A stretch of DNA of 64,000 nucleotides from Styela clava (Eukaryota): assembly GCF_964204865.1 (NCBI RefSeq), contig NC_135263.1, positions 14,322,001 to 14,386,000 of the forward strand, in the 5' to 3' direction. Position 1 is the first letter of the stretch. Each line of letters opens with the position of its first letter. The translations under genes were made by a program, and so were the position numbers. Shown here one piece after another: positions 27,644 through 62,497 of the stretch. The notes beneath the pieces are model-generated. The model saw nothing but the letters and a program-made list of their open reading frames with translations, did not search any database and was not told where the DNA came from.

Positions 27644-28819
27644 TCAAGCACATGGATCATTTTTCACAACGTTGGAGTTAAATCCAATTTGATCCATCAT
27701 AAAAGAAAGGCGAGAAAAGAATCCAAAAGAAAATGAAGGTTTTGTTGTTTTCTTAACACAAGGCTTCTTCGTTGGCTTCACGTGAGAAGCAGTTGGTTTC
27801 TGGTCCGTTGATATTTCTTTGCTAGGCTTCGTTGACAACTCATTCTTTGCAGACGACTTCGGTACAAGCGGTTTATTAACACTAGGTCTATGACGATTTT
27901 TGTTTGATTCTTTCTTGTTATAAGATTTCGTAGTCGGTTTTTTCGAGACGGACTTTTTATTTTGAATTTTCTCATGCTTTTTCTGTTCTACTGATGACTT
28001 CAATTTTTTGATGACGTTATTTTTTGTTGGGTTCTTGCTAGTAATTTTTTTCGTGGATGACTCAGTTGGCGAAGAGTCTGATAAACAATTTTCGAGCGGT
28101 CGTGCTTGTTTCTGAATTTTCTTTTTCGATGAAACTATTTTTGATAATTTATATTCTTCTGGAATGATACCTTGTGAGGTTCCGGCTAAAATATATAAAA
28201 AATACAATATAAGTGAATAAATAAACATACGAAGCCTATTATTGCACTCAAACAATAAAAGCAGACAAACTATTTCATTGTTTAACTAGCGAAAATTAAT
28301 AAGCACAAAAAAAATAAATAAAACAAACCTCCTTTAACTATGCAAGAACATTTATAGATACAACAGTGAGAGTACGCTTTGTTTCCACAATCTTTTGGAT
28401 CGACGAGTTTCTTGTTACGGAAATCATAGCAAGGAATCGTTTTTCTTTCAAATCCTTTTACTGTATACAGAAATACCAAATGTTATAAATAGCAATACCT
28501 ATTACAAAAAAATCTTCTGATTGTTCGTCAAAGCAAAGCAAGAAAGACGAAGGTATTATGAGATAATATTATATAAAATTAAATAAAAATGCTTTTTATA
28601 ATTTTATACGAATTTTCAATATTTTGAATTGATACAAGAAAGGAATATGTGCTGGCATCGTAATAAAATCTAAAATATATATCAGATAAGATGCAATAAA
28701 ATCTTGAACTTACCAGGAGCGCATTGTGTTTTGCTGATTTTATATCTGAGCTGAAAAGGGGTCAGTGATGCTGAAATATCGCAAATCCCGACGACCACGA
28801 CAAACAGTAATAATTTCAT
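27644..28819 (-). CDS. Secreted Cys-head / Lys-rich-stalk protein, minus paralogue, unit 1 (259 aa). Exons 28819-28714, 28460-28329, 28185-27644
   Basis: Signal peptide MKLLLFVVVVGICDISAS; two phase-1 GT-AG introns; 106+132+542 = 780 nt open frame; ends NDPCA. Confidence 0.9.
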
Positions 28820-29026
28820 TTTGTTAGAAAGTAATTCTGCAAAAATATAACAGGTTTTATTTTACTCTTATGATTAACCAACTTTGAGATGGAAATAGTA
28901 GTTGAAACTGTACAATATTCATTTGTATCATGACTAGAGCAAGCACTTGAATATTTCAGTAACTCTGAACATACTTGTTCGAAATACAATAATCGAATCT
29001 ATGTTGCGACAAGAAATTGTTTGTAG

Positions 29027-29167
29027 CTTTTATAGTTTCAGATTGACATTTGTGTTTATTGCCTTGAGCAACGATTGCCCTACATTACTATGTAAATTTG
29101 CATGCTTGTTACGTTTCTTAGCCACAAATCGTAATTTCATTTACTTTGGTAGCGTCACAGTGACGCA
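29027..29167 (-). promoter_or_regulatory. Candidate promoter of the minus gene: TATAAAAG plus palindrome GCGTCA-cag-TGACGC (repeated in every unit)
   Basis: TATA-like box ~210 bp upstream of the ATG, conserved at the equivalent position in the opposite arm; perfect palindrome at 29152-29166. Confidence 0.5.
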
Positions 29168-31605
29168 TTTTCTGTAAACCTAAACAAAGTGCTCTTGAAC
29201 ACATACTATTAGTAGACTCAAAGAATCCGTAGACTTGAATATTGCTATCGCCGCGATAAATACGTCATATTGAGTTTAAAAATAGTACAAGATTAAATCG
29301 TTGGATTAAGCTTTTCATGTAAAAATCAGGCTGTAATGGATTAACAAAGATGAAATGAGTCATGAAATTTTGTAAAAGTTTCAAATAACGTCAAGGAGAC
29401 TTTATTTGCTAGTATTTTTCTGTCTTTAATCAAATGTAATAAAATAAATTGTCATTAGTTAATGACATCATGCGATATAGCACGACATGGAATATCATTT
29501 AAATTAGGATTAGACGTTTGACGGTCGGGATCAAACAAAACCTAAAAATTCATTTAATTGAGCACTAGTTTCTCTGCATAATAAATCATATGAATATAAA
29601 CCGCTTTATAGTTATATTAAAGTTACATTGTTTATTATTCAAAAAAATCGATTATGGATTAGTAGATGGATTATCCTGGTTCTATGTCGTAATTTTTCTA
29701 AATTGATCCACAGTTTTTGTTTTAAAGTTGCAGTTTAACAATTATATAAAATTTAAAGATCTATTCTAACCGAGATATTAAAAATATATAGAAGTTTAAA
29801 TTTTTTATATTCAGCATTTCAACCGAGTATATTTAATAAAATAATTATTGCAGAATTTGTTAGATTCTTGTAAATCAAATTCCAAAAAAATGGTTTCCCA
29901 TAAACAAAATGTTTATCAGACTCAAAAGTGAATGTAATTAAAGCTTCGCAGCATTAATAAAATCTAAACTAATATTTCAGCAAAATATGAAACTTTCATT
30001 TGTGAGTTTCATTGTGAGAATACACAATATATTTATTCATACAATTAAAATATAAAACAACAATTTAAAGAAAAAATACAGAAAACTGAAAGGTGGAAAT
30101 AGGCTGAATTCACTACTGTCATGAATATTAAAGTTAAACACGTATATGCATAAGCCCAACACATTCTCTGCGAAAGCTTGATAAAAATTACGCATTTTTA
30201 TGACAAAGTGATCAGTATAACTACAACGTAAGTTACTTCTATTTTAAACAATTTATACCGCGGTTATTAAGCGATTAAGCGTTATGTTTCAATATATCCA
30301 TAGTTTAAATAGAAAATGAAAAAGTAATTGATTTAAAATATAATTCATCATTTGTATGATTATAATATTTATTACGTCAAGAAGTCTTACTTTTCGTGTT
30401 CGAATTTTGTTTGCAATTTGCTTCAAAAATGCGTCGGTCAAAAATCAATTTGTGGGCAATAAATCTGCTTACGATAAATGCGACAAATGTCATTCTATCA
30501 CCTTGGATTAAATAAAGTAATTATATGTGTGAACTTCACATATATAATTATTGCACATGTGTAAATGTAATCGAATATGTGAATTTATATTTATCCTGAG
30601 CCATAAGTTCAACACAGTACATTTCTGCCTATTTCCGAAATTCATTTTTCTTTTTCTTTTTCCCCAACATTATTCTTTTATATTTTAATTGTATAAATAT
30701 ATTGTGTATTATTGGAAAGTCACAAATAAAAGTACCATGTTTTGCTATGATATTAGTTTTAAATTTTAGTGATGCTGTAAAGCTTTAATGACATTTACTT
30801 TCAGGTGTGATACACATTTATTTATGGAGAATCATAGTTAAAGCGGTATATCTTTATAAGAATATTCTTACAAAGACTAGTGCCGAATTAGTTTCATCCC
30901 GACCGTCAAACCTGTAAACCTCTTTAAAATTATTATACCTAATTGCACTAAAATGCATGATGTCAATAACTTACTAATGATAAAAAAATATGCTAATCAC
31001 AATTGAATTGAGAAAGTAAAACGCATTTAAGTAAAGTCTTCCCGGCGTTATTTGGGTATTTTACAAAAATCCTAATCTCATTCTATCTCTATGTTTCGTT
31101 AAACATAAATGTTAATCCATAACACCCCAGACATTACCATCCACTATAGCTTAATTTTTACCTAAAAAGATTAATCCAATTCAAGACAATGTAGTTATGG
31201 GGAACGTCTGTACCCAAATATGAAATAACCATTCTAAATAGTGTGATCAAGTCAAAATATTTCTGACTAATCCAACTTGCAAAAATAATCTTTCCACTTA
31301 TCTACAGAGAGACTCCAAAATAGAGAACTTATAAATTTTATGATTACTTGTTAATTTTCTTATCAACCGACCTTCTGTTTTAGTAAGATTGTACCCAAAA
31401 GTTTCACGTTGTGCATGAAAGTTATGTTCTCTTTGGAACATGTTCCAAATGGCCATTTTGGCGTTGAAGACACACTTGCATACGTTGCAGCCTTGAGTTT
31501 ACCAGTCGAATAATGATTGCCTTGACCAACTATTGTTTTACAATTCAAATTATGTTTGCATTTCACCAATAGTTTTAAACACAATTTGTAATTGTATTAA
31601 CATCA

Positions 31606-31773
31606 GTTGCGTCATAATGACGTATTTTCAGTAATCACAAACACACCACATACAAATAAATATCATTAATTAATGCTCCTAAAGAAACACCACACTCGGT
31701 GGCGTCATGGTGACGTATTTTCAATAATCCCAAACAAATCACACTCAAATAAATATCATTAAATAATGCTCTC
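31606..31773. repeat. 93-bp-period tandem duplicate in the centre of the divergent spacer; each copy carries GCGTCA-N3-TGACGT
   Basis: gcgtcataatgacgtattttca..aatc...aaataaatatcatt..taatgctc occurs twice (31609 and 31702). Confidence 0.85.
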
Positions 31774-33404
31774 AAATAATCGACAGACTTGTCTATTGCT
31801 ATTGTCGGGATTAAACGTCATAGCGAGTTTAAAAATAGATCTGAATAAATCCGATAGACTAAGTTTTTTACGTAGAAACTACGCGACAACACAGATAAAA
31901 TGTGACATGAAAATACATTGCAAAACTTTTGGATTTAGTCCATCATTTTATCCTTCTTTGACAATGAATGATTGTTAGATTAACTTTAAAAAAATATTGT
32001 TGAGGTGATAATGATATGTTTAATATGTATTGCCTATTAAGGGACCTATATTTTTTCTTGTATAAAAGAATTATTTTTATAAAGTTTATTTCAATTAGGT
32101 AGCAAATCAGAAATTAAGCTTTTTTGTGATAAAAAAAAATTCTGACAAATTTATTCATATACCTAAATTTAATTATTACACAATAGCGCATGAGATCCTT
32201 TTTTTTATAAACATATTATAACAGAAATCTACTGTGTAGAACGTATGGCTCAGGATAAATATAAATTCTCATATTCGATTACATTTACACACGTGCAATA
32301 AATATATAGGTGTATAAGTTCACACGTATAAATACAGTTTTAATCCAAGACGATAGAATGACATTTGTCGTATTTATTGTTAAACAGATTTATTGCCCAC
32401 AGATTGATGACGCATTTTTGAAGCAAATTGCAAATAAAGTTCGAACACGAAAATTACGAATTTTTGACGTCATAAATATTATAATTATACAAATATTGCA
32501 TTATATTTTATTAAATTATCCTTTTTTTCAGTTTTTATTAAAACCATTTATTTACTGAAAGTTATAACTGCGTCATAAATTGTTTAAAAATAGAAGTTAC
32601 TCCTAATGTACTTATCACATTGTCATAAACATTCGTGGTTTTTACTAATGTGCAGGACTAATGCATCAACATGCATCAGATGTTGATGTTCAATTTTGGT
32701 TTAATATTTATGATATTGGTGATTTCAGCCTATTTCCACATTTCCTGTATTTTTTCCTAAGGTTGCTTTTTTGTATTTTAGTTGTATAGATATTTGGGAT
32801 TTCTGGAAATTCAGAACAATCTTAGTTTTAGATTTTGATGATGTGGTAAAGCTTTAATGACATTCTAATATCTCGATGTAAATTCTTCATAAATTCATAC
32901 ATTTTAAAACTGCAACTCTAAAATATAAAATTGTGGATGAACAAGAGTATCTTTTAATGGATACAGGTATATCAATTCCTAATATTCTGAATTAATTTAT
33001 TTTAAATAATAAACAATGTAACTTTGGGTATAACTATAAATTTGTATATGATAATAAAATTCGTTATAATGCATTTAAAAGGCATGATGTCATTAACTTA
33101 CTAATGATAAACACTATGTTAATCACGATTGAATAAAGACAGAAAAATACTACCTAATAAAGTCTTCTTGACGTTATTAGGGAATTTTACTAAAATTCAT
33201 GTCACATTTTATGTTTTTACATCTTTGTTAATCCATTGCAACCTGATTTTCACGTGAGAAGCTCAATCTAACTTTTTAATCTTGTTCTATTTTTAAACTC
33301 ACTATGACGTTTTAATCGTGACAATAGCAATAATTAAATCTACGGATTCTTTGAGTCTACTAGTAGTATTTATTCAAGAGGTCTTCGTTTGGGTTTACAG
33401 AAAA

Positions 33405-33553
33405 TGCGTCACTATGACGATACCAAGGTAAATGAAATTACGATTAGTGGCTAGGAAACGTTACAAGAGTGCAAATTTACAAAGTAATATGGGGCAATTG
33501 TTGCCCGAGGCCAGAAACACAAATGTCAATCTGAAACTTTGCATCTATAAAAG
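33405..33553 (+). promoter_or_regulatory. Candidate promoter of the plus gene: GCGTCA-cta-TGACGA plus TATAAAAG (repeated in every unit)
   Basis: Mirror image of the minus-gene upstream region; TATA-like box at 33546-33553. Confidence 0.5.
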
Positions 33554-33775
33554 CTACAAACATTTTCTTGTTACAACATAATTCGATTATTGTATTTCGA
33601 AAAAATATGTTCAGAGCGACTGAAATATCTAAGTGCTTGTACTAGCCGTAAATGATAAATTGCACAAATGGGTATTTATAAAGTATTATTCCAATTCTAT
33701 TTCAACCTTAAATTTGGTTAATCACAGCATCAAAATAAAATCTAGTTTATTTTTGCAGAATTACTTTCTAACAAA

Positions 33776-35011
33776 ATGAAATTATTATTCTTTGTCGTGG
33801 TCGTCGGGATTTGCGATATTGCAGCATCATTGACCCCTTTTCAGCTCAGATATAAAATCAGCAAAACACAATGTGCTCCAGGTAGGTTCAAGATTTTATT
33901 GTCTCATATCTGATATATGTTTTAGACTATATAAAGATTCCAGCACATATCCTATTCTTTAATTCCCTAAAAAAAAATGCGTTCAAAATTACAAATAGCA
34001 TTTTTATTTAATTTCATTTAATATTATCTTACAATATCACAATGTTTTTTGCTTTGCTTTAACGAATAATCAAGAGAATTCTCGGAAATAGTTATTGTTA
34101 TTTATAACATATGGTATTTCTGTATACAGTTAGAGGATTTGAAAGAAAAACGATTCCTTGCTATGATTTCCGTAACAAGAAACTCGTCGATCCAAAAGAT
34201 TGTGGAAACAAAGCGTACTCTCACTGTTGTATTTATAAATGTTCTTGCATAGTTAAAGGAGGTTTGTTTTATTTTTTTTGTGTTTATTAATTTTCGCTTT
34301 TCAAACAATTAAATAGTTTGCCTGGTTTTATTGTAGCCAAAACACAAGAAAATTCCTCAGTTGGTTTATCAGGACATTTTTGAAATTTTATAGGCACAAC
34401 ACTTGTGATACGTTTGAGTGCGATAATACTCTTTGTAACTTTTACTTATTCACTTTTATTTTTTTTTAGCCGGAACCTCACTAGGTATCATTCCAGAAGA
34501 ATATAAATTATCAAAAATAGTTTCATCAAAAAAGAATGTTCAGAAACAAGCAAGACTGCTAGAAAATTGTTTACCAGACGCTTCAACAAGCGAGTCATAT
34601 CCGAAAAAGATAACCAGCAAGAATCCAACAGAAAATATTGTCATCAAAAAATTAAAGTCATCAGTAGAACAGAAAAAGCATGAGAAAATGCAAAATAAAA
34701 AGACTGTCGGTAAAAAGCCGAAAACGAAGTCTGTTAATAAAAAAGAATTAAACAAAAATCGTCAAAGACCAAGTGTTAATGAACCGCTTGTACCGAAGTC
34801 GTCTGCAAATAATAAGATTTCAAAGAAGACCGACAAAGGAAAATCAACAAACCAGAAACCAACTTTTTCTCACGTGAAGCCAACGAAAAAACCATGTGTT
34901 ACGAAAACAACAAAACCTTCATTTTCTTTTGGATTCTTTTCTCGACTTTCTTTTATGATGGATCAATTTGGTTTTAACTCCAACGTTGTGAAAAATGATT
35001 CCTGTTCTTGA
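33776..35011 (+). CDS. Secreted Cys-head / Lys-rich-stalk protein, plus paralogue, unit 1 (259 aa, intact). Exons 33776-33881, 34130-34261, 34470-35011
   Basis: MKLLFFVVVVGICDIAASLTPFQLRYKISKTQCAP|VRGFERKTIPCYDFRNKKLVDPKDCGNKAYSHCCIYKCSCIVKG|AGTSLGIIPEEYK...NDSCS; exon sizes identical to the minus copy. Confidence 0.9.
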
Positions 35012-35629
35012 TTAGCATGCAGCAGAATTTAAATTTTTTTTATAATATTAAATTATTACAACAACAATTACCCTTAAACTTATTTTCACGCTTCTCTGCA
35101 TTTTTTTTTGTCTTTTGGATAAAAATATAGTGCTTTTATACTATAACCACTTTCTATTGGATATGTCGGGGTTCATCATCAATCACTGCGGGCTAGATAA
35201 AAATCAATATTCAGAAGAGAATAGTTGACCGGTCTGAATGCATGAAATTCGATGGTCAAAAAATAAGCGGAAGTTATGTGAGCCATTCTGCGGCGACAAT
35301 TTTTTTCACATAATTGTCTCTTGTGGAATTCGAATCTCAATAAGCAATATTGATACGATTGCGAGTAAATGAATAGTCTGATGACTCTCCGGAAATCTTG
35401 AATATTGCTGAACAAATAGTGTTGCAGTTTCTGGTTTCGAAATAAAACCCACCGGTTCTTGCTATAATTTCAGAAGCAAGAAAATCGTTGATTTAAAAAC
35501 AGAACAAAGAAAGCGTACTTTTGTAGTTGAAAACCCGCAGTTTGCATCTGCAAAGCCTTGTGTTAAAATCGGCAAAATGGACTCTCGTAGATCAGTTTGA
35601 TTACCACTCTCAAGTAATTTGAAGGATAA

Positions 35630-35932
35630 TTACTTATGGATTTTAATCGGTAAGTATGTTGATAGGTATTTGTCTGTCTTTAAGTCTGTCTGTCTGTTAG
35701 ATGCACGCGATATCTCACGAAAACGAGATTGAATCTGCTCCAGATTTTGCATGTGCATTCGTCATATTTCGGACCAGGAGTCTATTGATTTTGGGCGAAA
35801 TATGTCGTATAATTAGCGAGTTATTAATTAATTAGTGATGGGACACAAGGTCACTATGGAATAAGAGCGCTGTTTTGGGGATCCCCCAACTTTCGATCGA
35901 TAAGTCTTCGGTCTCTGACCGATATTTTCGTT
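35630..35932 (+). mobile_element. HINE/DINE-1-like non-autonomous Helentron element, amplified with the array (also ~44782-45083, ~53933-54234, ~63116-63417)
   Basis: 5' imperfect palindrome tacttatggat...atcggtaagta, (GTCT)n microsatellite followed by gttag..gatatctc, related subterminal atcgataagtc, and 3' hairpin cggtc-tct-gaccg. Confidence 0.6.
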
Positions 35933-36827
35933 ATAGTAGTTATTGCCTCTTGCGTCTATGCTTTTGAATAAGCATTAAACACGTGATTTTCACGTTCTTT
36001 TGGCGACAGTGATGGTTTCAAAAATCGGGAATCGTTGAGAATTGACTTCACATTGTACAATATAATTCTGATCAAACCATTATTGAAACTACTTTCTATA
36101 TCTTGATAACAAAATGTTTCCAAAACTGTGGTATTTAATTGGGACTGTTTCATATCTGAAATAAATTTTAGTTAATAAAAATTTGAACCTTTAGTTCATT
36201 GTTTAATTGTCTAATACTAACATTTAAATTAACAAATTTAGCGGGTAAATTAGTAGTAATTCTAACAACAACTTTCTACGTTTACCACCTTATTCAATAC
36301 GAAAAACACATTGAAAATCACAGAGTCTAAAATACCAAGATTAGTCTAACTACCAACAATCTATGCATTTTTTCGGGTAGCCTACAAAACATTCCCACCT
36401 TGATTTCAAATATTCATTCAGACTCAGGCTAATAATTAAATTATTGAGTCTTATTTCCTGATTTAATATTTTAACCATACACCAGACGACGTAAAACAAA
36501 ATAACCAATTTTGGAATGTTCTAAAGCTCTATTCTGAATTGTATAAACACCATGACATCTACACAGTATTGCTATTTTGATTAAAATCTAAGACAAAATA
36601 TCCAATAAAAAAAGCTGGAAATGATTAAAATCACAAAAAATAATTTCTATTAATATTTATTATATTGATTGCCGCAAGTGTTTATTGTTCTATAATCACG
36701 CATATGGAGAGCATTGTTGATCAATTCAAAAAACACTATTTAAAATATCAAAATAACAATTATATTTAAAATAAAAAATAAATAAAACAACAAATAATTG
36801 CGTCGTTATAATTCTGTTTCGTGCAAA

Positions 36828-37972
36828 TCAGGCACAGGCCTCATTTTTCACAACGTTGGAGTTAAACCCAAATTTATCCATCATAAAAGAAAGTCGAGAA
36901 AAGAATCCAAAAGAAAATGAAGGTTTTGTTGTTTTCGTAACACAAGGCTTCTCTGTTGGATTTACGTGAGGAGCTGTTGGTTTCTGGTTCGTTGATATTT
37001 CTTTGCTAGGTTTCTTTGAAAACTCATTCTTTGCAGACGACTTCGGTACAAGCGGGTTATTAACAATTGGTCTTTGACGACTTTTGTTTGATTCTTTCTT
37101 GTCAAAAGACTTCGTAGTCGTTTTTTTAGAGACTGTCCTCTTATTTTGCATTTTCTCATGCTTTTTCTGTTCTACTGATGACTTCAATTTTTTGATGACG
37201 TTATTTTTTGTTGGGTTCTTGCTAGTAATTTTTTTCGTGGATGACTCACTTGGCGAAGTGTCTGGAAAACAATTTTCGAGCAGTCGTGCTTGTTTCTGAA
37301 TTTTCTTTTTCGATGAAACTATTTTTGATAATTTGTATTCTTCTGGAATGATACCTTGTGAGGTTCCGGCTAAAATATTTAAAAAATACAATATAAGTGA
37401 ATAAATAAACATACGAAGCCTATTATTGCACTCAAACAATAAAAGCAGACAAACTATTTCATTGTTTAACAAGCGAAAATTAATAAACACAAAGAAAAAT
37501 AAAACAAACCTCCTTTAACTATGCAAGAACATTTATAGATACAACAGTGAGAGTACGCTTTGTTTCCACAATCTTTTGGATCGACGAGTTTCTTGTTACG
37601 GAAATCATAGCAAGGAATCGTTTTTCTTTCAAATCCTTTTACTGTATACAGAAATACCAAATGTTATAAATAGCAATACCTATTACAAAAAAATCTTCTG
37701 ATTATTTGTTGAAACAAAGCAAGAAAGACGAAGGTATTATAAGATAATATTATATGAAATTGAATAAAAATGCTTTTTATAATTTATATACGAATAATAC
37801 ACGAATTTTTAATATTTTGAATTGATACGAGAATGAAATATGTGCTGGCATCGTTATTGAACTTACCTGGAGCACATTGTGTTTTGCTGATTTTATATCT
37901 GAGCTGAAAAGGGGTGAGTGATGCAGCAATATTGCAAATCCCAATGACAACGACAAAAAGTAATAATTTCAT
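36828..37972 (-). CDS. Array gene, minus paralogue, unit 2 (259 aa). Exons 37972-37867, 37641-37510, 37369-36828
   Basis: Same structure; signal peptide MKLLLFVVVIGICNIAAS; ends NEACA; intron 1 is 225 nt versus 253 nt in units 1 and 4. Confidence 0.9.
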
Positions 37973-42930: not shown

Positions 42931-44163
42931 ATGAAATTATTATTCTTTGTCGTGGTCGTCGGGATTTGCGATATTGCAGCATCATTGACCCCTTTTCAGC
43001 TCAGATATAAAATCAGCAAAACACAATGTGCTCCAGGTAGGTTCAAGATTTTATTGTCTCATATCTGATATATGTTTTAGACTATATAAAGATTCCAGCA
43101 CATATCCTATTCTTTAATTCCCTAAAAAAAAAAATGCGTTCAAAATTACAAATAGCATTTTTATTTAATTTCATTTAATATTATCTTACAATATCACAAT
43201 GTTTTTTGCTTTGCTTTAACGAATAATCAAGAGAATTCTCGGAAATAGTTATTGTTATTTATAACATATGGTATTTCTGTATACAGTTAGAGGATTTGAA
43301 AGAAAAACGATTCCTTGCTATGATTTCCGTAACAAGAAACTCGTCGATCCAAAAGATTGTGGAAACAAAGCGTACTCTCACTGTTGTATTTATAAATGTT
43401 CTTGCATAGTTAAAGGAGGTTTGTTTTATTTTTTTTGTGTTTATTAATTTTCGCTTTTTAAACAATTAAATAGTTTGCCTGGTTTTATTGTAGCCAAAAC
43501 ACAAGAAAATTCCTCAGTTGGTTTATCAGGACATTTTTGAAATTTTATAGGCACAACACTTGTGATACGTTTGAGTGCGATAATACTCTTTGTAACTTTT
43601 ACTTATTCACTTTTATTTTTTTTTAGCCGGAACCTCACTAGGTATCATTCCAGAAGAATATAAATTATCAAAAATAGTTTCATCAAAAAAGAATGCTCAG
43701 AAACAAGCAAGACTGCTAGAAAATTGTTTACCAGACGCTTCAACAAGCGAGTCATATCTGAAAAAGATAACCAGCAAGAATCCAACAGAAAATATTGTCA
43801 TCAAAAAATTAAAGTCATCAGTAGAACAGAAAAAGCATGAGAAAATGCAAAATAAAAAGACTGTCGGTAAAAAGCCGAAAACGAAGTAATAAAAAAGAAT
43901 TAAACAAAAATCGTCAAAGACCAAGTGTTAATGAACCGCTTGTACCGAAGTCGTCTGCAAATAATAAGATTTCAAAGAAGACCGACAAAGGAAAATCAAC
44001 AAACCAGAAACCAACTTTTTCTCACGTGAAGCCAACGAAAAAACCATGTGTTACGAAAACAACAAAACCTTCATTTTCTTTTGGATTCTTTTCTCGACTT
44101 TCTTTTATGATGGATCAATTTGGTTTTAACTCCAACGTTGTGAAAAATGATTCCTGTTCTTGA
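42931..44163 (+). pseudogene. Array gene, plus paralogue, unit 2, truncated (stop at 43887-43889, 166 aa). Exons 42931-43036, 43287-43418, 43627-
   Basis: A 5-bp deletion changes acg aag tct gtt aat to acg aag taa t. The downstream sequence is otherwise intact to the homologous stop at 44163. Confidence 0.85.
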
Positions 44164-52081: not shown

Positions 52082-53313
52082 ATGAAATTATTATTCTTTG
52101 TCGTGGTCGTCGGGATTTGCGATATTGCAGCATCATTGACCCCTTTTCAGCTCAGATATAAAATCAGCAAAACACAATGTGCTCCAGGTAGGTTCAAGAT
52201 TTTATTGTCTCATATCTGATATATGTTTTAGACTATATAAAGATTCCAGCACATATCCTATTCTTTAATTCCCTAAAAAAAAAATGCGTTCAAAATTACA
52301 AATAGCATTTTTATTTAATTTCATTTAATATTATCTTACAATATCACAATGTTTTTTGCTTTGCTTTAACGAATAATCAAGAGAATTCTCGGAAATAGTT
52401 ATTGTTATTTATAACATATGGTATTTCTGTATACAGTTAGAGGATTTGAAAGAAAAACGATTCCTTGCTATGATTTCCGTAACAAGAAACTCGTCGATCC
52501 AAAAGATTGTGGAAACAAAGCGTACTCTCACTGTTGTATTTATAAATGTTCTTGCATAGTTAAAGGAGGTTTGTTTTATTTTTTTTGTGTTTATTAATTT
52601 TCGCTTTTTAAACAATTAAATAGTTTGCCTGGTTTTATTGTAGCCAAAACACAAGAAAATTCCTCAGTTGGTTTATCAGGACATTTTTGAAATTTTATAG
52701 GCACAACACTTGTGATACGTTTGAGTGCGATAATACTCTTTGTAACTTTTACTTATTCACTTTTATTTTTTTTTAGCCGGAACCTCACTAGGTATCATTC
52801 CAGAAGAATATAAATTATCAAAAATAGTTTCATCAAAAAAGAATGCTCAGAAACAAGCAAGACTGCTAGAAAATTGTTTACCAGACGCTTCAACAAGCGA
52901 GTCATATCTGAAAAAGATAACCAGCAAGAATCCAACAGAAAATATTGTCATCAAAAAATTAAAGTCATCAGTAGAACAGAAAAAGCATGAGAAAATGCAA
53001 AATAAAAAGACTGTCGGTAAAAAGCCGAAAACGAAGTAATAAAAAAGAATTAAACAAAAATCGTCAAAGACCAAGTGTTAATGAACCGCTTGTACCGAAG
53101 TCGTCTGCAAATAATAAGATTTCAAAGAAGACCAACAAAGGAAAATCAACAAACCAGAAACCAACTTTTTCTCACGTGAAGCCAACGAAAAAACCATGTG
53201 TTACGAAAACAACAAAACCTTCATTTTCTTTTGGATTCTTTTCTCGACTTTCTTTTATGATGGATCAATTTGGTTTTAACTCCAACGTTGTGAAAAATGA
53301 TTCCTGTTCTTGA
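52082..53313 (+). pseudogene. Array gene, plus paralogue, unit 3, truncated (stop at 53037-53039, 166 aa). Exons 52082-52187, 52437-52568, 52777-
   Basis: Same 5-bp deletion as unit 2 (aaaacgaagtaataaaaaag). Confidence 0.85.
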
Positions 53314-55128
53314 TTAGCATGCAGCAGAATTTAAAATTTTTTTATAATATTAAATTATTACAACAACAATTACCCTTAAACTTATTTTCACGCTTCTCTG
53401 CATTTTTTTTTGTCTTTTGGATAAAAATATAGTGCTTTTATACTATAACCACTTTCTATTGGATATGTCGGGGTTCATCATCAATCACTGCGGGCGAGAT
53501 AAAAATCAATATTCAGAAGAGAATAGTTGACCGGTCTGAATGCATGAAATTCGATGGTCAAAAAATAAGCGGAAGTTATGTGAGCCATTCTGCGGCGACA
53601 ATTTTTTTCACATAATTGTCTCTTGTGGAATTCGAATCTCAATAAGCAATATTGATACGATTGCGAGTAAATGAATAGTCTGATGACTCTCCGGAAATCT
53701 TGAATATTGCTGAACAAATAGTGTTGCAGTTTCTGGTTTCGAAATAAAACCCACCGGTTCTTGCTATAATTTCAGTAGCAAGAAAATCGTTGATTTAAAA
53801 ACAGAACAAAGAAAGCGTACTTTTGTAGTTGAAAACCCGCAGTTTGCATCTGCAAAGCCTTGTGTTAAAATCGGCAAAATGGACTCTCGTAGATCAGTTT
53901 GACTACCACTCTCAAGTAATTTGAAGGTTAATTACTTATGGATTTTAATCGGTAAGTATGTTGATAGGTATTTGTCTGTCTTTAAGTCTGTCTGTCTGTT
54001 AGATGCACGCGATATCTCACGAAAACGAGATTGAATCTGCTCCAGATTTTGCATGTGCATTCGTCATATCTCGGACCAGGAGTCTATTGATTTTGGGCGA
54101 AATATGTCGTATAATTAGCGAGTTATCAATTAATTAGTGATGGGACACAAGGTCACTATGGAATAAGAGCGCTGTTTTGGGGATCCCCCAACTTTCGATC
54201 GATAAGTCTTCGGTCTCTGACCGATATTTTCGTTATAGTAGTTATTGCCTCTTGCGTTTATGCTTTTGAATAAGCATTAAACACGTGATTTTCACGTTTT
54301 TTGGCGACAGTGATGGTTTCAAAAATCGGGAATCGTTGAGAATTGACTTCACATGGTACAATATAATTCTGATCAAACCTTTATTGAAACTACTTTCTAT
54401 ATCTTGATAACAAAATGTTTCCAAAACTGTGGTATTTAATTGGGACTGTTTCACATCTAAAATAAATTTTAGTTAATAAAAATTTGAACCTTTAGTACAT
54501 TGTTTAATTGTCTAATACTAACATTTAAATTAACAAATTTAGCGGGTAAATTAGTAGTAATTCTAACAACAACTTTCTACGTTTACCACCTTATTCAATA
54601 CGAAAAACACATTGAAAATCACAGAGTCTAAAATACCAAGATTAGTCTAACTACCAACAATCTATGCATTTTTTCGGGTAGCCTACAAAACATTCCCACC
54701 TTGTTTTCAAATATTCATTCAGACTCAAGCTAATAATTAAATTATTGAGTCTTATTTCCTGATTTAATATTTTAACCATACACCAGACGACGTAAAACAA
54801 AATAACCAATTTTGGAATGTTCTAAAGCTCTATTCTGAATTGTATAAACACCATGACATCTACACAGTATTGCTATTTTGATTAAAATCTAAGACAAAAT
54901 ATCCAATAAAAAAAGCTGGAAATGATTAAAATCACAAAAAATAATTTCTATTAATATTTATTATATTGATTGCCACAAGTGTTTATTGTTCTATAATCAC
55001 GCATATGGAGAGCATTGTTGATCAATTCAAAAAACACTATTTAAAATATCAAAATAACAATTATATTTAAAATAAAAAATAAATAAAACAACAAATAATT
55101 GCGTTGTTATAATTCTGTTTCGTGCAAA

Positions 55129-56301
55129 TCAGGCACAGGCCTCATTTTTCACAACGTTGGAGTTAAACCCAAATTTATCCATCATAAAAGAAAGTCGAGA
55201 AAAGAATCCAAAAGAAAATGAAGGTTTTGTTGTTTTCGTAACACAAGGCTTCTTTGTTGGATTTACGTGAGGAGCTGTTGGTTTCTGGTTCGTTGATATT
55301 TCTTTGCTAGGTTTCTTTGAAAACTCATTCTTTGCAGACGACTTCGGTACAAGCGGGTTATTAACAATTGGTCTTTGACGACTTTTGTTTGATTCTTTCT
55401 TGTCAAAAGCCTTCGTAGTCGTTTTTTTAGAGACTGTCCTCTTATTTTGCATTTTCTCATGCTTTTTCTGTTCTACTGATGACTTCAATTTTTTGATGAC
55501 GTTATTTTTTGTTGGGTTCTTGCTAGTAATTTTTTTCGTGGATGACTCACTTGGTGAAGTGTCTGGAAAACAATTTTCGAGCAGTCGTGCTTGTTTCTGA
55601 ATTTTCTTTTTTGATGAAACTATTTTTGATAATTTGTATTCTTCTGGAATGATACCTTGTGAGGTTCCGGCTAAAATATATAAAAAATACAATATAAGTG
55701 AATAAATAAACATACGAAGCCTATTATTGCACTCAAACAATAAAAGCAGACAAACTATTTCATTGTTTAACAAGCGAAAATTAATAAACACAAAGAAAAA
55801 TAAAACAAACCTCCTTTAACTATGCAAGAACATTTATAGATACAACAGTGAGAGTACGCTTTGTTTCCACAATCTTTTGGATCGACGAGTTTCTTGTTAC
55901 GGAAATCATAGCAAGGAATCGTTTTTCTTTCAAATCCTTTTACTGTATACAGAAATACCAAATGTTATAAATAGCAATACCTATTACAAAAAAATCTTCT
56001 GATTATTTGTTGAAACAAAGCAAGAAAGACGGTGGTATTATAAGATAATATTATATGAAATTAAATAAAAATTCTTTTTATAATTTTATACGAATTTTTA
56101 ATATTTTGAATTAATACAAGAATGAAATATGTGCTGGCATCGTAATAAAATCTAAAATATATATCATATATGAGGCAATAAAATTTTGAACTTACCAGGA
56201 GCACATTGTGTTTTGCTGATTTTATATCTGAGCTGAAAAGGGGTCAGTGATGCTGCAATATCGCAAATACCGACGACCACGACAAAATGTAATAATTTCA
56301 T
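55129..56301 (-). CDS. Array gene, minus paralogue, unit 4 (259 aa). Exons 56301-56196, 55942-55811, 55670-55129
   Basis: Signal peptide MKLLHFVVVVGICDIAAS; 253-nt intron 1 like unit 1, but exon 3 like units 2/3 (ends NEACA). Confidence 0.9.
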
Positions 56302-59300
56302 TTTGTTAGAAAGTAATTCTGCAAAAATATAACAGGTTTTATTTTACTCTTATGATTAACCAAATTTGAGATGGAAATAGTAGTTGAAACTGTACAATAT
56401 TCATTTGTATCATGACTAGAGCAAGCACTTGAATATTTCCATAACTCTGAACATACTTGTTCGAAATACATTAATCGAATCTATGTTGCAACAAGAAATT
56501 GTTTGTAGCTTTTATAGTTTCAGATTGACATTTGTGTTTATTGCCTTGAGCAACGATTGCCCTACATTACTATGTAAATTTGCATGCTTGTTACGTTTCT
56601 TAGCCACAAATCGTAATTTCATTTACTTTGGTAGCGTCACAGTGACGCATTTTCTGTAAACCTAAACAAAGTGCTCTTGAACACATACTATTAGTAGACT
56701 CAAAGAATCCGTAGACTTGAATATTGCTATCGACACGATAAATACGTCATATTGAGTTTAAAAATAGAACAAGATTAAATCGTTGGATTAAGCTTTTCAT
56801 GTAAAAATCAGGCTGTAATGGATTAACAAAGATGAAATGAGTCATGAAATTTTGTAAAAGTTTCAAATAACGTCAAGGAGACTTTATTTGCTAGTATTTT
56901 TCTGTCTTTAATCAAATGTAATAAAATAAATTGTCATTAGTTAATGACATCATGCGATATAGCACGACATGGAATATCATTTAAATTAGGATTAGACGTT
57001 TGACGGTCGGGATCAAACAAAACCTAAAAATTCATTTAATTGAGCACTAGTTTCTCTGCATAATAAATCATATGAATATAAACCGCTTTATAGTTATATT
57101 AAAGTTACATTGTTTATTATTCAAAAAAAATCGATTATGGATTAGTAGATGGATTATCCTGGTTCTATGTCGTAATTTTTCTAAATTGATCCACAGTTTT
57201 TGTTTTAAAGTTGCAGTTTAACAATTATATAAAATTTAAAGATCTATTCTAACCGAGATATTAAAAATATATAGAAGTTTAAATTTTTTATATTCAGCAT
57301 TTCAACCGAGTATATTTAATAAAATAATTATTGCAGAATTTGTTAGATTCTTGTAAATCAAATTCCAAAAAAATGGTTTCCCATAAACAAAATGTTTATC
57401 AGACTCAAAAGTGAATGTAATTAAAGCTTCGCAGCATTAATAAAATCTAAACTAATATTTCAGCAAAATATGAAACTTTCATTTGTGAGTTTCATTGTGA
57501 GAATACACAATATATTTATTCATACAATTAAAATATAAAACAACAATTTAAAGAAAAAATACAGAAAACTGAAAGGTGGAAATAGGCTGAATTCACTACT
57601 GTCATGAATATTAAAGTTAAACACGTATATGCATAAGCCCAACACATTCTCTGCGAAAGCTTGATAAAAATTACGCATTTTTATGACAAAGTGATCAGTA
57701 TAACTACATCGTAAGTTACTTCTATTTTAAACAATTTATACCGCGGTTATTAAGCGATTAAGCGTTATGTTTCAATATATCCATAGTTTAAATAGAAAGT
57801 GAAAAAGTAATTGATTTAAAATATAATTCATCATTTGTATGATTATAATATTTATTACGTCAAGAAGTCTTACTTTTCGTGTTCGAATTTTGTTTGCAAT
57901 TTGCTTCAAAAATGCGTCGGTCAAAAATCAATTTGTGGGCAATAAATCTGCTTACGATAAATGCGACAAATGTCATTCTATCACCTTGGATTAAATAAAG
58001 TAATTATATGTGTGAACTTCACATATATAATTATTGCACATGTGTAAATGTAATCGAATATGTGAATTTATATTTATCCTGAGCCATAAGTTCAACACAG
58101 TACATTTCTGCCTATTTCCGAAATTCATTTTTCTTTTTCTTTTTCCCCAACATTATTCTTTTATATTTTAATTGTATAAATATATTGTGTATTATTGGAA
58201 AGTCACAAATAAAAGTACCATGTTTTGCTATGATATTAGTTTTAAATTTTAGTGATGCTGTAAAGCTTTAATGACATTTACTTTCAGGTGTGATACACAT
58301 TTATTTATGGAGAATCATAGTTAAAGCGGTATATCTTTATAAGAATATTCTTACAAAGACTAGTGCCGAATTAGTTTCATCCCGACCGTCAAACCTGTAA
58401 ACCTCTTTAAAATTATTATACCTAATTGCACTAAAATGCATGATGTCAATAACTTACTAATGATAAAAAAAATATGCTAATCACAATTGAATTGAGAAAG
58501 TAAAACGCATTTAAGTAAAGTCTTCCCGGCGTTATTTGGGTATTTTACAAAAATCCTAATCTCATTCTATCTCTATGTTTCGTTAAACATAAATGTTAAT
58601 CCATAACACCCCAGACATTACCATCCACTATAGCTTAATTTTTACCTAAAAAGATTAATCCAATTCAAGACAATGTAGTTATGGGGAACGTCTGTACCCA
58701 AATATGAAATAACCATTCTAAATAGTGTGATCAAGTCAAAATATTTCTGACTAATCCAACTTGCAAAAATAATCTTTCCACTTATCTACAGAGAGACTCC
58801 AAAATAGAGAACTTATAAATTTTATGATTACTTGTTAATTTTCTTATCAACCGACCTTCTGTTTTAGTAAGATTGTACCCAAAAGTTTCACGTTGTGCAT
58901 GAAAGTTATGTTCTCTTTGGAACATGTTCCAAATGGCCATTTTGGCGTTGAAGACACACTTGCATACGTTGCAGCCTTGAGTTTACCAGTCGAATAATGA
59001 TTGCCTTGACCAACTATTGTTTTACAATTCAAATTATGTTTGCATTTCACCAATAGTTTTAAACACAATTTGTAATTGTATTAACATCAGTTGCGTCATA
59101 ATGACGTATTTTCAGTAATCACAAACACACCACATACAAATAAATATCATTAATTAATGCTCCTAAAGAAACACCACACTCGGTGGCGTCATGGTGACGT
59201 ATTTTCAATAATCCCAAACAAATCACACTCAAATAAATATCATTAAATAATGCTCTCAAATAATCGACAGACTTGTCTATTGCTATTGTCGGGATTAAAC

Positions 59301-61260
59301 GTCATAGCGAGTTTAAAAATAGATCTGAATAAATCCGATAGACTAAGTTTTTTACGTAGAAACTACGCGACAACACAGATAAAATGTGACATGAAAATAC
59401 ATTGCAAAACTTTTGGATTTAGTCCATCATTTTATCCTTCTTTGACAATGAATGATTGTTAGATTAACTTTAAAAAAATATTGTTGAGGTGATAATGATA
59501 TGTTTAATATGTATTGCCTATTAAGGGACCTATATTTTTTCTTGTATAAAAGAATTATTTTTATAAAGTTTATTTCAATTAGGTAGCAAATCAGAAATTA
59601 AGCTTTTTTGTGATAAAAAAAAATTCTGACAAATTTATTCATATACCTAAATTTAATTATTACACAATAGCGCATGAGATCCTTTTTTTTTATAAACATA
59701 TTATAACAGAAATCTACTGTGTAGAACGTATGGCTCAGGATAAATATAAATTCTCATATTCGATTACATTTACACACGTGCAATAAATATATAGGTGTAT
59801 AAGTTCACACGTATAAATACAGTTTTAATCCAAGACGATAGAATGACATTTGTCGTATTTATTGTTAAACAGATTTATTGCCCACAGATTGATGACGCAT
59901 TTTTGAAGCAAATTGCAAATAAAGTTCGAACACGTAAATTACGAATTTTTGACGTCATAAATATTATAATTATACAAATATTGCATTATATTTTATTAAA
60001 TTATCCTTTTTTTCAGTTTTTATTAAAACCATTTATTTACTGAAAGTTATAACTGCGTCATAAATTGTTTAAAAATAGAAGTTACTCCTAATGTACTTAT
60101 CACATTGTCATAAACATTCGTGGTTTTTACTAATGTGCAGGACTAATGCATCAACATGCATCAGATGTTGATGTTCAATTTTGGTTTAATATTTATGATA
60201 TTGGTGATTTCAGCCTATTTCCACATTTCCTGTATTTTTTCCTAAGGTTGCTTTTTTGTATTTTAGTTGTATAGATATTTGGGATTTCTGGAAATTCAGA
60301 ACAATCTTAGTTTTAGATTTTGATGATGTGGTAAAGCTTTAATGACATTCTAATATCTCGATGTAAATTCTTCATAAATTCATACATTTTAAAACTGCAA
60401 CTCTAAAATATAAAATTGTGGATGAACAAGAGTATCTTTTAATGGATACAGGTATATCAATTCCTAATATTCTGAATTAATTTATTTTAAATAATAAACA
60501 ATGTAACTTTGGGTATAACTATAAATTTGTATATGATAATAAAATTCGTTATAATGCATTTAAAAGGCATGATGTCATTAACTTACTAATGATAAACACT
60601 ATGTTAATCACGATTGAATAAAGACAGAAAAATACTACCTAATAAAGTCTTCTTGACGTTATTAGGGAATTTTACTAAAATTCATGTCACATTTTATGTT
60701 TTTACATCTTTGTTAATCCATTGCAACCTGATTTTCACGTGAGAAGCTCAATCTAACTTTTTAATCTTGTTCTATTTTTAAACTCACTATGACGTTTTAA
60801 TCGTGACAATAGCAATAATTAAATCTACGGATTCTTTGAGTCTACTAGTAGTATTTATTCAAGAGGTCTTCGTTTGGGTTTACAGAAAATGCGTCACTAT
60901 GACGATACCAAGGTAAATGAAATTACGATTAGTGGCTAGGAAACGTTACAAGAGTGCAAATTTACAAAGTAATATGGGGCAATTGTTGCCCGAGGCCAGA
61001 AACACAAATGTCAATCTGAAACTTTGCATCTATAAAAGCTACAAACATTTTCTTGTTACAACATAATTCGATTATTGTATTTCGAAAAAATATGTTCAGA
61101 GCGACTGAAATATCTAAGTGCTTGTACTAGCCGTAAATGATAAATTGCACAAATGGGTATTTATAAAGTATTATTCCAATTCTATTTCAACCTTAAATTT
61201 GGTTAATCACAGCATCAAAATAAAATCTAGTTTATTTTTGCAGAATTACTTTCTAACAAA

Positions 61261-62497
61261 ATGAAATTATTATTCTTTGTCGTGGTCGTCGGGATTTGCG
61301 ATATTGCAGCATCATTGACCCCTTTTCAGCTCAGATATAAAATCAGCAAAACACAATGTGCTCCAGGTAGGTTCAAGATTTTATTGTCTCATATCTGATA
61401 TATGTTTTAGACTATATAAAGATTCCAGCACATATCCTATTCTTTAATTCCCTAAAAAAAAAATGCGTTCAAAATTACAAATAGCATTTTTATTTAATTT
61501 CATTTAATATTATCTTACAATATCACAATGTTTTTTGCTTTGCTTTAACGAATAATCAAGAGAATTCTCGGAAATAGTTATTGTTATTTATAACATATGG
61601 TATTTCTGTATACAGTTAGAGGATTTGAAAGAAAAACGATTCCTTGCTATGATTTCCGTAACAAGAAACTCGTCGATCCAAAAGATTGTGGAAACAAAGC
61701 GTACTCTCACTGTTGTATTTATAAATGTTCTTGCATAGTTAAAGGAGGTTTGTTTTATTTTTTTTGTGTTTATTAATTTTCGCTTTTCAAACAATTAAAT
61801 AGTTTGCCTGGTTTTATTGTAGCCAAAACACAAGAAAATTCCTCAGTTGGTTTATCAGGACATTTTTGAAATTTTATAGGCACAACACTTGTGATACGTT
61901 TGAGTGCGATAATACTCTTTGTAACTTTTACTTATTCACTTTTATTTTTTTTTAGCCGGAACCTCACTAGGTATCATTCCAGAAGAATATAAATTATCAA
62001 AAATAGTTTCATCAAAAAAGAATGTTCAGAAACAAGCAAGACTGCTAGAAAATTGTTTACCAGACGCTTCAACAAGCGAGTCATATCCGAAAAAGATAAC
62101 CAGCAAGAATCCAACAGAAAATATTGTCATCAAAAAATTAAAGTCATCAGTAGAACAGAAAAAGCATGAGAAAATGCAAAATAAAAAGACTGTCGGTAAA
62201 AAGCCGAAAACGAAGTCTGTTAATAAAAAAGAATTAAACAAAAATCGTCAAAGACCAAGTGTTAATGAACCGCTTGTACCGAAGTCGTCTGCAAATAATA
62301 AGATTTCAAAGAAGACCGACAAAGGAAAATCAACAAACCAGAAACCAACTTTTTCTCACGTGAAGCCAACGAAAAAACCATGTGTTACGAAAACAACAAA
62401 ACCTTCATTTTCTTTTGGATTCTTTTCTCGACTTTCTTTTATGATGGATCAATTTGGTTTTAACTCCAACGTTGTGAAAAATGATTCCTGTTCTTGA
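61261..62497 (+). CDS. Array gene, plus paralogue, unit 4 (259 aa, intact). Exons 61261-61366, 61616-61747, 61956-62497
   Basis: Retains acgaagtctgttaat; the protein matches the unit 1 plus copy. Confidence 0.9.

What the first reader, a model, noticed from the sequence alone, without database searches (positions are those of the whole stretch)
27644..62497. Amplified family of a secreted Cys-head / polycationic-stalk / Phe-tail protein (8 copies)
Seen in sequence: a 3-exon gene, fragmented in the ORF track, splices cleanly to 259 aa. It has a signal peptide, a ~50-aa head with 7 Cys, a stalk exon with 36 Lys in ~180 aa (my count, plus copy), then FSFGFFSRLSFMMDQFGFNSNVV and a conserved penultimate Cys (DPCA/EACA/DSCS). 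I recognise no family for the whole protein. Inference: recent high-dosage amplification of a secreted polycation suggests a bulk effector, such as an antimicrobial, an adhesive/matrix (tunic, mucus) protein or a gamete-surface protein. The penultimate Cys and aromatic tail could drive oligomerisation or membrane binding.
Basis: partly seen in the sequence, partly recalled or inferred. Interest (0 to 1): 0.85.

Follow-up and report, generated by a model that had tools for sequence, protein, structure and literature searches.

The report
Sea-squirt secreted polycationic three-module gene family
The window holds eight copies (six intact) of a sea-squirt (Styela clava) gene for a secreted, strongly positively charged protein with a cysteine-rich head, a lysine-rich stalk and a phenylalanine-rich tail; it belongs to an uncharacterised family of about 27 genes with no known relatives, and its job, most likely a bulk matrix, mucus or defence protein, is untested.

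Summary
All eight copies have three exons with GT-AG borders, and the spliced product is the 259-aa RefSeq "uncharacterized protein" of Styela clava. Six copies are intact. Two (p2, p3) share a 5-bp deletion that truncates the protein to 166 aa.

The array is a ~9.15-kb unit holding a divergent, inverted gene pair. Five units are 99-100% identical and two are older. It runs past the window to 14 genes, 11 of them intact.

Exons are conserved far above introns (exon 2 97.7% against 73-78%), and dN/dS is 0.2-0.35, so these are working genes.

An exhaustive HMMER search of 1.84 billion proteins and a whole-genome scan show about 27 genes at four loci on three chromosomes, plus four fragments from another, unidentified species. 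No other annotated organism has a relative, and there is no Pfam or PDB match.

Head and tail are conserved and the mature Cys count is always even. The stalk varies freely, from a net charge of about 0 to +62.

The most likely role is a secreted polyanion-binding matrix or mucus protein. Host defence is the main rival. This is an orphan family of moderate interest.

The parts
27185..27254 (+). 70-nt relic of the middle of exon 3, a decayed partner copy at the left edge of the array
   Evidence: blastn 93% to exon 3; inverted match to 27818-27887; translation
27644..28819 (-). gene m1, intact, 259 aa (= P0002, LOC120341269). Exons 28819-28714, 28460-28329, 28185-27644. Ends DPCA. The most divergent m copy.
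28820..33775 (.). 4.96-kb spacer between the divergent genes. It is itself an imperfect palindrome (arms 75-92% complementary), is specific to the array, and holds one ~120-nt dispersed repeat.
33776..35011 (+). gene p1, intact, 259 aa (= P0010). Exons 33776-33881, 34130-34261, 34470-35011. Ends DSCS. Identical to p4.
36828..37972 (-). gene m2, intact, 259 aa (= P0001, LOC144432183). Exon 1 37972-37867 encodes the signal peptide, the conserved N-terminal peptide and Cys33. Exon 2 37641-37510 is the six-Cys module, phase 1-1. Exon 3 37369-36828 encodes the linker, Lys-rich stalk and Phe tail.
42931..44163 (+). gene p2, broken. A 5-bp deletion between 43886 and 43887 puts TAA TAA in frame. The predicted product is 166 aa (P0009) with head and half the stalk but no tail.
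45979..47123 (-). gene m3, intact. Its protein is identical to m2, with 1 nt difference in exon 3.
52082..53313 (+). gene p3, broken by the same 5-bp deletion as p2 (between 53036 and 53037)
55129..56301 (-). gene m4, intact, 259 aa (= P0006)
61261..62497 (+). gene p4, intact, identical to p1
27626..64000 (.). tandem array of a ~9.15-kb unit (start-to-start spacing 9150-9184 nt). Four units lie in the window, and the array continues to C18:14409155 outside it.

Best explanation
SHOWN. This is a real, protein-coding, taxon-restricted gene family of Styela clava. Each gene has three exons that map onto modules:
- Exon 1: signal peptide plus a conserved N-terminal peptide (S-L-T-P-F-Q-L-R-Y-K) and one Cys.
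- Exon 2 (phase 1-1): a six-Cys module, C-x13-C-x7/8-CC-x3-C-x-C.
- Exon 3: a short conserved linker with one Cys, then a compositionally biased stalk of variable length, then a tail in which two invariant Cys 34-40 residues apart bracket a Phe-rich segment (F-F-S-R-L-S-F-M-M ... G-F-N-S).

In the array genes the mature protein has 44-45 Lys, a net charge of about +34 to +36 and pI ~10.

The locus arose by an inverted duplication giving the m and p types. The pair was then amplified in tandem, very recently for five of the units.

INFERRED. The protein is secreted in bulk and works outside the cell as a polyanion-binding matrix, coat or mucus component. The extended stalk is rich in Ser, Thr, Pro and Lys and is probably O-glycosylated. 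It would bind sulfated glycans or other polyanions electrostatically and offer many Lys side chains for cross-linking. The disulfide-stabilised head and the disulfide-closed aromatic tail loop would be the specific docking ends, so each molecule acts as a two-ended linker. High gene dosage would serve output.
For: Gene reality:
- GT-AG borders and phases are kept in all 14 array copies and in paralogues only 30-50% identical.
- Exons carry no indels while introns carry many. m2 against p1 identity is 97.7% for exon 2, 87% for exon 3 and 73-78% for introns.
- dN/dS is 0.2-0.35 in every module.
- RefSeq models match the hand model exactly.

Secretion: the N-terminus is the only hydrophobic segment.

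Modularity:
- Head and tail are conserved in all paralogues, while the stalk runs from 65 to 198 aa and from net charge 0 to +62.
- One paralogue's stalk is a 24-nt repeat x13 encoding K-P-M-K-P-T-P-K.
- The mature Cys count is always 10 or 12.
- The two extra Cys of P0019, P0020 and P0021 appear together.

Dosage: five 9.15-kb units are 99-100% identical.

History: the m and p types are reciprocally monophyletic with 100% support.

Background knowledge, not tested here: Styela tunic and mucosal layers are rich in sulfated polysaccharides, and Lys-rich secreted proteins serve as cross-linking substrates in other marine cements (review PMC12817120).
Against: - There is no expression, localisation or biochemical datum.
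- The C14 subfamily (P0021-like) has a neutral stalk and pI 6.2, so polyanion binding cannot be the function of the whole family.
- The array genes' stalk has no tandem repeats and only about 35% Ser, Thr and Pro, so a mucin-type stalk is not established.
- AlphaFold models are of low confidence (pLDDT 39.7 and 55.9), so neither the fold of the head nor the disulfide map is known.
- Recent amplification, polycationic charge and taxon restriction fit an immune effector equally well.
Confidence: 0.4

Rival explanations
1. Host-defence effector. The secreted polycation, or peptides cut from it at its many basic sites, binds and damages or agglutinates microbes. The aromatic tail would insert into membranes. 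Amplification would reflect an arms race or a demand for dose.
For: The mature protein has net charge +34 to +36 and pI ~10. The tail has moderate amphipathicity, with hydrophobic moment ~0.5. The family is taxon-restricted, tandemly amplified and carries pseudogenes, as is usual for immune gene families. S. clava is known, from my own knowledge, for Phe-rich cationic styelins and for clavanins. Other orphan cationic secreted families were noted elsewhere in this genome.
Against: dN/dS is 0.2-0.35, with no sign of diversifying selection in any module. The protein is 259 aa with 10 Cys and a long low-complexity stalk, unlike known ascidian antimicrobial precursors. One subfamily is not cationic. 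The Phe tail itself is nearly uncharged and is flanked by Cys.
Confidence: 0.25
2. Stage- or sex-specific coat or adhesive protein, for example of the egg or follicle coat, larval papilla glue or adult holdfast cement. Lys-aromatic (cation-pi) contacts between stalk and tail would drive self-coacervation and curing.
For: Lys-rich and Phe-rich segments sit in one chain. The family has basic and neutral members that could pair. Dosage amplification is like that of cement and eggshell genes. Known ascidian adhesive proteins come only from Ciona and are unrelated, so the Styela components are unknown.
Against: There are no DOPA-type Tyr-rich motifs and no EGF, vWA or TSP1 domains typical of described marine adhesives. 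Nothing links the genes to gonad, papillae or holdfast.
Confidence: 0.12
3. The copy number is partly an assembly artefact: a smaller array over-expanded in a long-read assembly, so that 'eight copies' overstates the dosage.
For: Units are 99-100% identical, and p1 = p4 and m2 = m3 = m5 exactly. The older RefSeq annotation listed only about four loci of this type (LOC1203... names), while the newer one adds the LOC1444... loci.
Against: Units are distinguishable. Spacings are 9150 to 9184 nt. A 5-bp deletion is private to p2 and p3. An exon 1/intron 1 variant is private to m2, m3 and m5. m1, p6 and p7 are clearly diverged. There are no N gaps in the window. Even a collapse would leave several distinct m and p genes.
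Confidence: 0.08
4. Precursor of a small disulfide-rich signalling or toxin-like peptide. The exon 2 six-Cys module would be the active product, and the stalk and tail a carrier or propiece.
For: Exon 2 has the C-C-CC-C-C framework of inhibitor cystine knots, is a symmetrical phase 1-1 exon and is the most conserved part, invariant across 11 of the 14 array copies at the protein level. The Atlas gave weak ShKT-like leads of 0.77-0.81.
Against: The tail is as conserved as the head across the family. No dibasic cleavage site is conserved at the head/stalk border. Loop lengths of 13, 7, 0, 3 and 1 are atypical for knottins. Pfam toxin and ShK models give no hit even at E 10. Atlas scores of this size occur in a third of shuffled proteins.
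Confidence: 0.07

Closest known systems
Lubricin / proteoglycan 4 and other mucin-like linker proteins
   Same: The layout is alike: signal peptide, small Cys-rich N-terminal domain, long extended Lys/Pro/Thr-rich stalk (repeats of K-P-x-K-P-T-P-K in paralogue P0017) and a distinct C-terminal module. An earlier automatic RefSeq name for two paralogues was 'proteoglycan 4-like'.
   Different: There is no somatomedin-B and no hemopexin domain. The stalk of the array genes is not repetitive. The protein is far shorter. The likeness is one of composition only, with no homology.
Lys-rich cement and adhesive proteins of marine invertebrates (mussel foot proteins, sandcastle-worm Pc proteins, barnacle cp19k and lcp2-57k)
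   Same: All are secreted, strongly basic, low-complexity and encoded by multi-copy genes. Lys serves for electrostatic binding and cross-linking (review read).
   Different: There is no sequence similarity, no Tyr/DOPA-rich motifs and no evidence of expression in an adhesive gland. The conserved Cys head and Cys-bracketed Phe tail have no counterpart.
Styela clava host-defence peptides (styelins, clavanins; from my own knowledge)
   Same: Same species, secreted, cationic, Phe-rich stretches.
   Different: Those are short Cys-free peptides from small prepropeptides. Here the protein is 259 aa with 10 Cys, and the Phe-rich part is the least charged segment.
Six-Cys mini-domains (inhibitor cystine knot, ShKT, WAP)
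   Same: Exon 2 carries six invariant Cys in the order C-C-CC-C-C. The Atlas gave weak feature-based leads to ShKT clusters.
   Different: No Pfam model matches even at E 10. Spacing differs from ShKT (which has no adjacent CC) and from WAP (eight Cys). The fold could not be modelled with confidence, and Foldseek found nothing.

Membership tests
ShKT domain (Pfam PF01549) | Match to the ShK profile; six Cys ending C-x3-C-x2-C with no adjacent CC | tested here: not met
   No ShK hit for whole proteins or for 15 exon 2 modules at E up to 10. The observed pattern is C-x13-C-x7/8-CC-x3-C-x-C. Atlas scores of 0.77-0.81 are within chance.
Proteoglycan 4 / lubricin | N-terminal somatomedin-B domains and C-terminal hemopexin domain flanking a mucin repeat | tested here: not met
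   A Pfam scan of 14 family members finds neither domain, only composition-driven HC2 and extensin hits in stalks.
Inhibitor cystine knot (knottin) | C-C-CC-C-C framework with the knotted 1-4, 2-5, 3-6 disulfide topology | tested here: inconclusive
   The framework is present in exon 2. Loop lengths are atypical. The AlphaFold2 model has pLDDT 55.9, below 50 over the CC-x3-C-x-C part. Foldseek found no match. Disulfide topology cannot be tested in silico here.
WAP four-disulfide core (Pfam PF00095) | Eight Cys with the C-x5-C-x5-CC-x3-C-x3/4-C core; match to the profile | tested here: not met
   There is no Pfam hit, and only six Cys in the module with a different spacing.
Mucin-type secreted protein | Tandem Pro/Thr/Ser-rich repeats carrying dense O-glycans | tested here: inconclusive
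   Paralogue P0017 has a 24-nt x13 repeat. The array genes have no tandem repeat, and Ser, Thr and Pro make up 38 of 108 stalk residues. Glycosylation cannot be tested with these tools.
Ascidian antimicrobial prepropeptides (styelin/clavanin type) | Short precursor (<100 aa), Cys-free cationic core, acidic propiece (features recalled from memory) | tested here: not met
   The protein is 259 aa with 10 mature Cys and no acidic propiece, and the tail has net charge +2 to +3. No reference sequences were available for a direct alignment.
The family itself (Styela head-stalk-tail proteins, unnamed) | Three exons in phases 1-1; N-terminal L-x-P-F-Q-L-R-Y-K peptide; six-Cys exon 2; G-C linker Cys; K-K-P-C ... 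F-F-S-R ... G-F ... C tail loop | tested here: met
   All eight window copies meet it at the gene level. The features are shared with P0015-P0021.

The most novel reading that the evidence does not exclude
The family is a previously unrecognised protein component of the leathery stolidobranch tunic or holdfast. The polycationic stalk would condense with sulfated tunic glycans and, through Lys-Phe cation-pi contacts and Lys cross-linking by tunichrome-type quinones or lysyl oxidase, cure into a tough matrix. The novel six-Cys head and the disulfide-closed Phe loop would be new cellulose- or matrix-docking domains. That would be a new class of chordate biomaterial protein with two new domains.
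Probability: 0.12. Interest if true: 0.75.

Novelty: new variant of a known kind. Interest (0 to 1): 0.45.

Why it matters
[quoted passage not shown] Little is known about the proteins of its tunic, mucus net and holdfast, and its innate effectors are only partly known.

This family has about 27 genes with two conserved modules that match nothing known, and its dosage was recently amplified. That makes it a concrete candidate for one of those bulk secretions.

If expression places it in the tunic or holdfast, it offers a handle on ascidian adhesion and tunic toughness. If expression places it in haemocytes or mucosa, it is a new kind of large cationic defence protein. Otherwise it is one more taxon-restricted secreted family in a genome that has many.

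Tried and rejected
- Structure. AlphaFold2 gave pLDDT 39.7 for the whole protein with 8 sequences and 55.9 for the exon 2 module with 15 paralogues. Foldseek on the latter gave nothing (best E 3.2). VIA searches were not run on such weak models.
- Sequence families. Pfam on exons, whole proteins and 15 head modules and PDB sequence profiles gave only chance or composition hits (BORCS8, HC2, extensin).
- The Atlas gave only sub-threshold ShKT leads.
- JGI metagenome contigs held no relative. One search failed because the alignment was too divergent.
- Literature. No paper holds the LOC or XP identifiers or the family motifs. Styela endostyle and tunic papers and a marine-adhesive review mention nothing alike. 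The sc-SPLASH preprint describes unrelated secreted repeat proteins.
- A GPI anchor or a second membrane segment is rejected. The C-terminus is polar, and no segment outside the signal peptide exceeds KD 1.2.
- The spacer is not a transposon. It is array-specific apart from one ~120-nt dispersed repeat.
- No promoter motif is shared across paralogues.
- Spliced models. Searches used exon references or the RefSeq protein ids that the tools returned, and P0001 equals the spliced model.
Full report
ORGANISM AND OBSERVATION

The window is Styela clava chromosome piece C18:14322001-14386000. It is AT-rich (28-33% GC over the array) and has no N.

I read one - copy and one + copy by hand and projected the model onto all copies by alignment. 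All eight copies have three exons of 106, 132 and 542 nt (537 nt in two copies), AG/GT borders and intron phases 1 and 1.

The product is 35+1+43+1+179 = 259 aa. A protein search with exon 3 alone returned RefSeq proteins of 259-260 aa named "uncharacterized protein LOC... [Styela clava]". The first of these, P0001, is residue-for-residue my hand model.

Searches used exon references or the protein ids that the tools returned.

The head has 7 Cys. Exon 3 has 34-37 Lys in 179 residues, 36 in p1 and p4. The endings are DPCA, EACA and DSCS.

ARE THEY WORKING GENES?

No RNA data could be obtained. The DNA itself argues strongly that they are.

- Between the two gene types (m2 against p1), exon 2 is 97.7% identical and exon 3 is 87%. 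Neither has an indel.
- The introns are 73-78% identical with 57-70 gapped columns. The 3' flank is unalignable.
- Nei-Gojobori dN/dS is 0.20, 0.23 and 0.31 for exons 1 to 3, and about 0.3 even in the stalk.
- The exon structure, phases and splice dinucleotides persist in paralogues that share only 27-53% of residues.

Two window copies are broken. p2 and p3 share a 5-bp deletion (TCTGT, present at 34730-34734 in p1) that brings TAA TAA into frame. RefSeq models them as 166 aa. Outside the window, m7 has an in-frame TAA.

ANATOMY AND HISTORY OF THE ARRAY

The repeat unit is ~9.15 kb, with spacings of 9150-9184 nt. Its layout is:
- an m gene on the - strand;
- a 4.96-kb spacer;
- a p gene on the + strand;
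- a 1.8-kb tail-to-tail spacer.

The m and p genes and much of the spacer between them form an imperfect palindrome. Its arms are 75-92% complementary. This agrees with an earlier scan note.

The spacer is specific to the array apart from one ~120-nt dispersed repeat, so it is not a transposon.

The whole array spans C18:14349644-14409155 and holds 14 genes, 11 of them intact. There are five near-identical units and two older, rearranged ones.

In a maximum-likelihood tree of the 14 genes, the m and p types are reciprocally monophyletic with 100/100 support. The inverted duplication therefore came first and the pair was amplified afterwards.

Identities do not follow simple unit order. p1 = p4 and m2 = m3 = m5, while m1, p6 and p7 are the outliers. 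This points to higher-order duplication and conversion.

A 70-nt relic of exon 3 lies at 27185-27254, left of the first gene.

THE WIDER FAMILY

I ran a profile of eight proteins against 1.84 billion representative proteins with HMMER, without a word index. It found twelve true relatives and one spurious hit, P0026.
- Eight of the twelve are Styela clava RefSeq proteins: P0001 itself and the paralogues P0015-P0021. Two of them were earlier auto-named "proteoglycan 4-like".
- Four (P0022-P0025) are gene fragments from Logan assemblies. They match the S. clava genome at only 30-50% identity, so they come from another species, which I could not identify.

A profile scan of the whole genome and tBLASTn on fetched loci give four loci:
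- this array, with 14 genes;
- a 29-kb cluster 1.5 Mb upstream on C18, with five divergent genes (P0018, P0015, P0017, P0020, P0016) and a tail fragment;
- a 110-kb cluster on C14, with about seven P0021-like genes;
- a single gene on C19 (P0019).

That is roughly 27 genes. A word-based profile search of 5.8 billion proteins again returned only S. clava entries. JGI metagenome contigs held none.

PROTEIN ARCHITECTURE

1. Signal peptide. It is the only segment with membrane-like hydropathy (KD19 = 2.3). Nothing else exceeds 1.2.

2. Head, residues ~18-113.
   - A near-invariant N-terminal peptide (S-L-T-P-F-Q-L-R-Y-K-I-S-K) with Cys33.
   - The exon 2 module, with six invariant Cys (C-x13-C-x7/8-CC-x3-C-x-C). 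Being a phase 1-1 exon, it is a self-contained unit.
   - A conserved G-A-G-T..I-P..Y-K-L stretch and a further invariant Cys (..G-C).

3. Stalk. It runs from 65 to 198 residues and from a net charge of 0 to +62.
   - It is non-repetitive and rich in Lys, Ser, Thr and Asn in the array genes (+18 to +22).
   - It is a 24-nt tandem repeat x13 in P0017.
   - It is neutral in the C14 subfamily (P0021, pI 6.2).

4. Tail. An invariant Cys in K-K-P-C is followed, 34-40 residues later, by the last or penultimate Cys. Between them lies F-S-F-x-F-F-S-R-L-S-F-M-M..G-F-N-S..V-V.

Every full-length member has 10 or 12 Cys after the signal peptide. The two extra Cys of P0019, P0020 and P0021 occur together, one in the N-terminal peptide and one in the exon 2 hairpin. 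This suggests that those two segments pack against each other.

This is inference. No disulfide was mapped.

COMPARISON WITH KNOWN FAMILIES

- Pfam gives nothing for the exons, for 14 whole proteins or for 15 head modules, even at E 10. The only hits are composition-driven (HC2, extensin, BORCS8).
- PDB sequence profiles give only E of 1 or more.
- AlphaFold2 models are of low confidence (39.7 and 55.9). They show only a short hairpin at C-Y-D/K-L-V and a short helix in the tail.
- Foldseek finds nothing.
- The Atlas offers ShKT clusters at 0.77-0.81, a level reached by a third of shuffled proteins. The Cys spacing does not fit ShKT or WAP.
- The C-C-CC-C-C order is that of knottins, but the loop lengths are unusual and the topology is untested.
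- In layout, though not in ancestry, the nearest things are lubricin-type linker proteins and the Lys-rich cement proteins of other marine animals.
- No paper mentions these genes or their motifs.

HOW IT MOST LIKELY WORKS

Shown: the protein is secreted, disulfide-rich at both ends and strongly cationic in the array genes. The genes are under purifying selection and dosage was amplified very recently.

Inferred (about 0.4): it is a bulk extracellular linker or coat protein.
- The extended cationic stalk would bind polyanions. Sulfated glycans are abundant in Styela tunic and mucosal layers, from my own knowledge.
- The stalk would also supply Lys for cross-linking.
- Head and tail would be the specific docking ends.

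Main rival (about 0.25): a large cationic host-defence protein.

Lesser rivals:
- a stage- or sex-specific coat or adhesive protein (about 0.12);
- partial assembly inflation of the copy number (about 0.08);
- a carrier for a small six-Cys peptide (about 0.07).

The neutral C14 subfamily shows that charge is a property of subfamilies. The family-wide function must lie in the head and tail.

VERDICT

The genes are already annotated, as "uncharacterized". Even so, the family, its two orphan modules and its architecture have not been described in anything I could search.

This is a taxon-restricted secreted family of moderate interest. A tissue-resolved RNA-seq mapping would settle most of the open points.

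Noticed in passing
window 27185-27254 (+): A 70-nt relic of the middle of exon 3 (reads ..N-K-P-L-V-P-K-P-S-A-K-N-E-L..), left of the first gene. It is a decayed partner copy marking the array's left edge.
   Followed up: partly
window 37989-37997 (-), 33751-33759 (+) and the equivalent sites of the paralogues in L053-L066: A pyrimidine tract plus AG (TTTTTGCAG, its G at -18 from the ATG in the m and p genes) lies 3-30 nt upstream of the start codon in almost every family member. It could be the acceptor of a 5'-UTR intron or of spliced-leader trans-splicing. Untested.
   Followed up: partly
window ~31350-31490: A ~120-nt element inside the divergent spacer has dozens of 70-83% identical copies on many chromosomes. 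It looks like a MITE or SINE.
   Followed up: no
window 37867-37972 and intron 1 (m2, m3; also m5 outside the window): Exon 1 and intron 1 of m2, m3 and m5 differ by 6-9% from m4, m6 and m7, while the flanks are 97-100% identical. This looks like a short gene-conversion tract. Exon 2 also has an unusually low synonymous divergence between the m and p types, 0.04 against 0.3-0.45 in exon 3.
   Followed up: partly
window 24639-25769 (+) and 26068-26724 (+): Two long single-exon ORFs of 376 and 218 aa lie just left of the array and have no Pfam match. The first has one hydrophobic segment and a Ser/Thr-rich tail.
   Followed up: no
window 14-424 (+) and 18992-19570 (-): Ordinary neighbours: an exon with an Ig domain (E 3.8e-7) and an mTERF-like exon (E 5e-5, just under the Pfam cut-off).
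   Followed up: no
L054:2419-2777 (C18:12832419-12832777): The stalk of paralogue P0017 is a 24-nt tandem repeat x13 encoding K-P-M-K-P-T-P-K, with higher-order 48- and 72-nt periods. This shows that stalks grow by slippage.
   Followed up: partly
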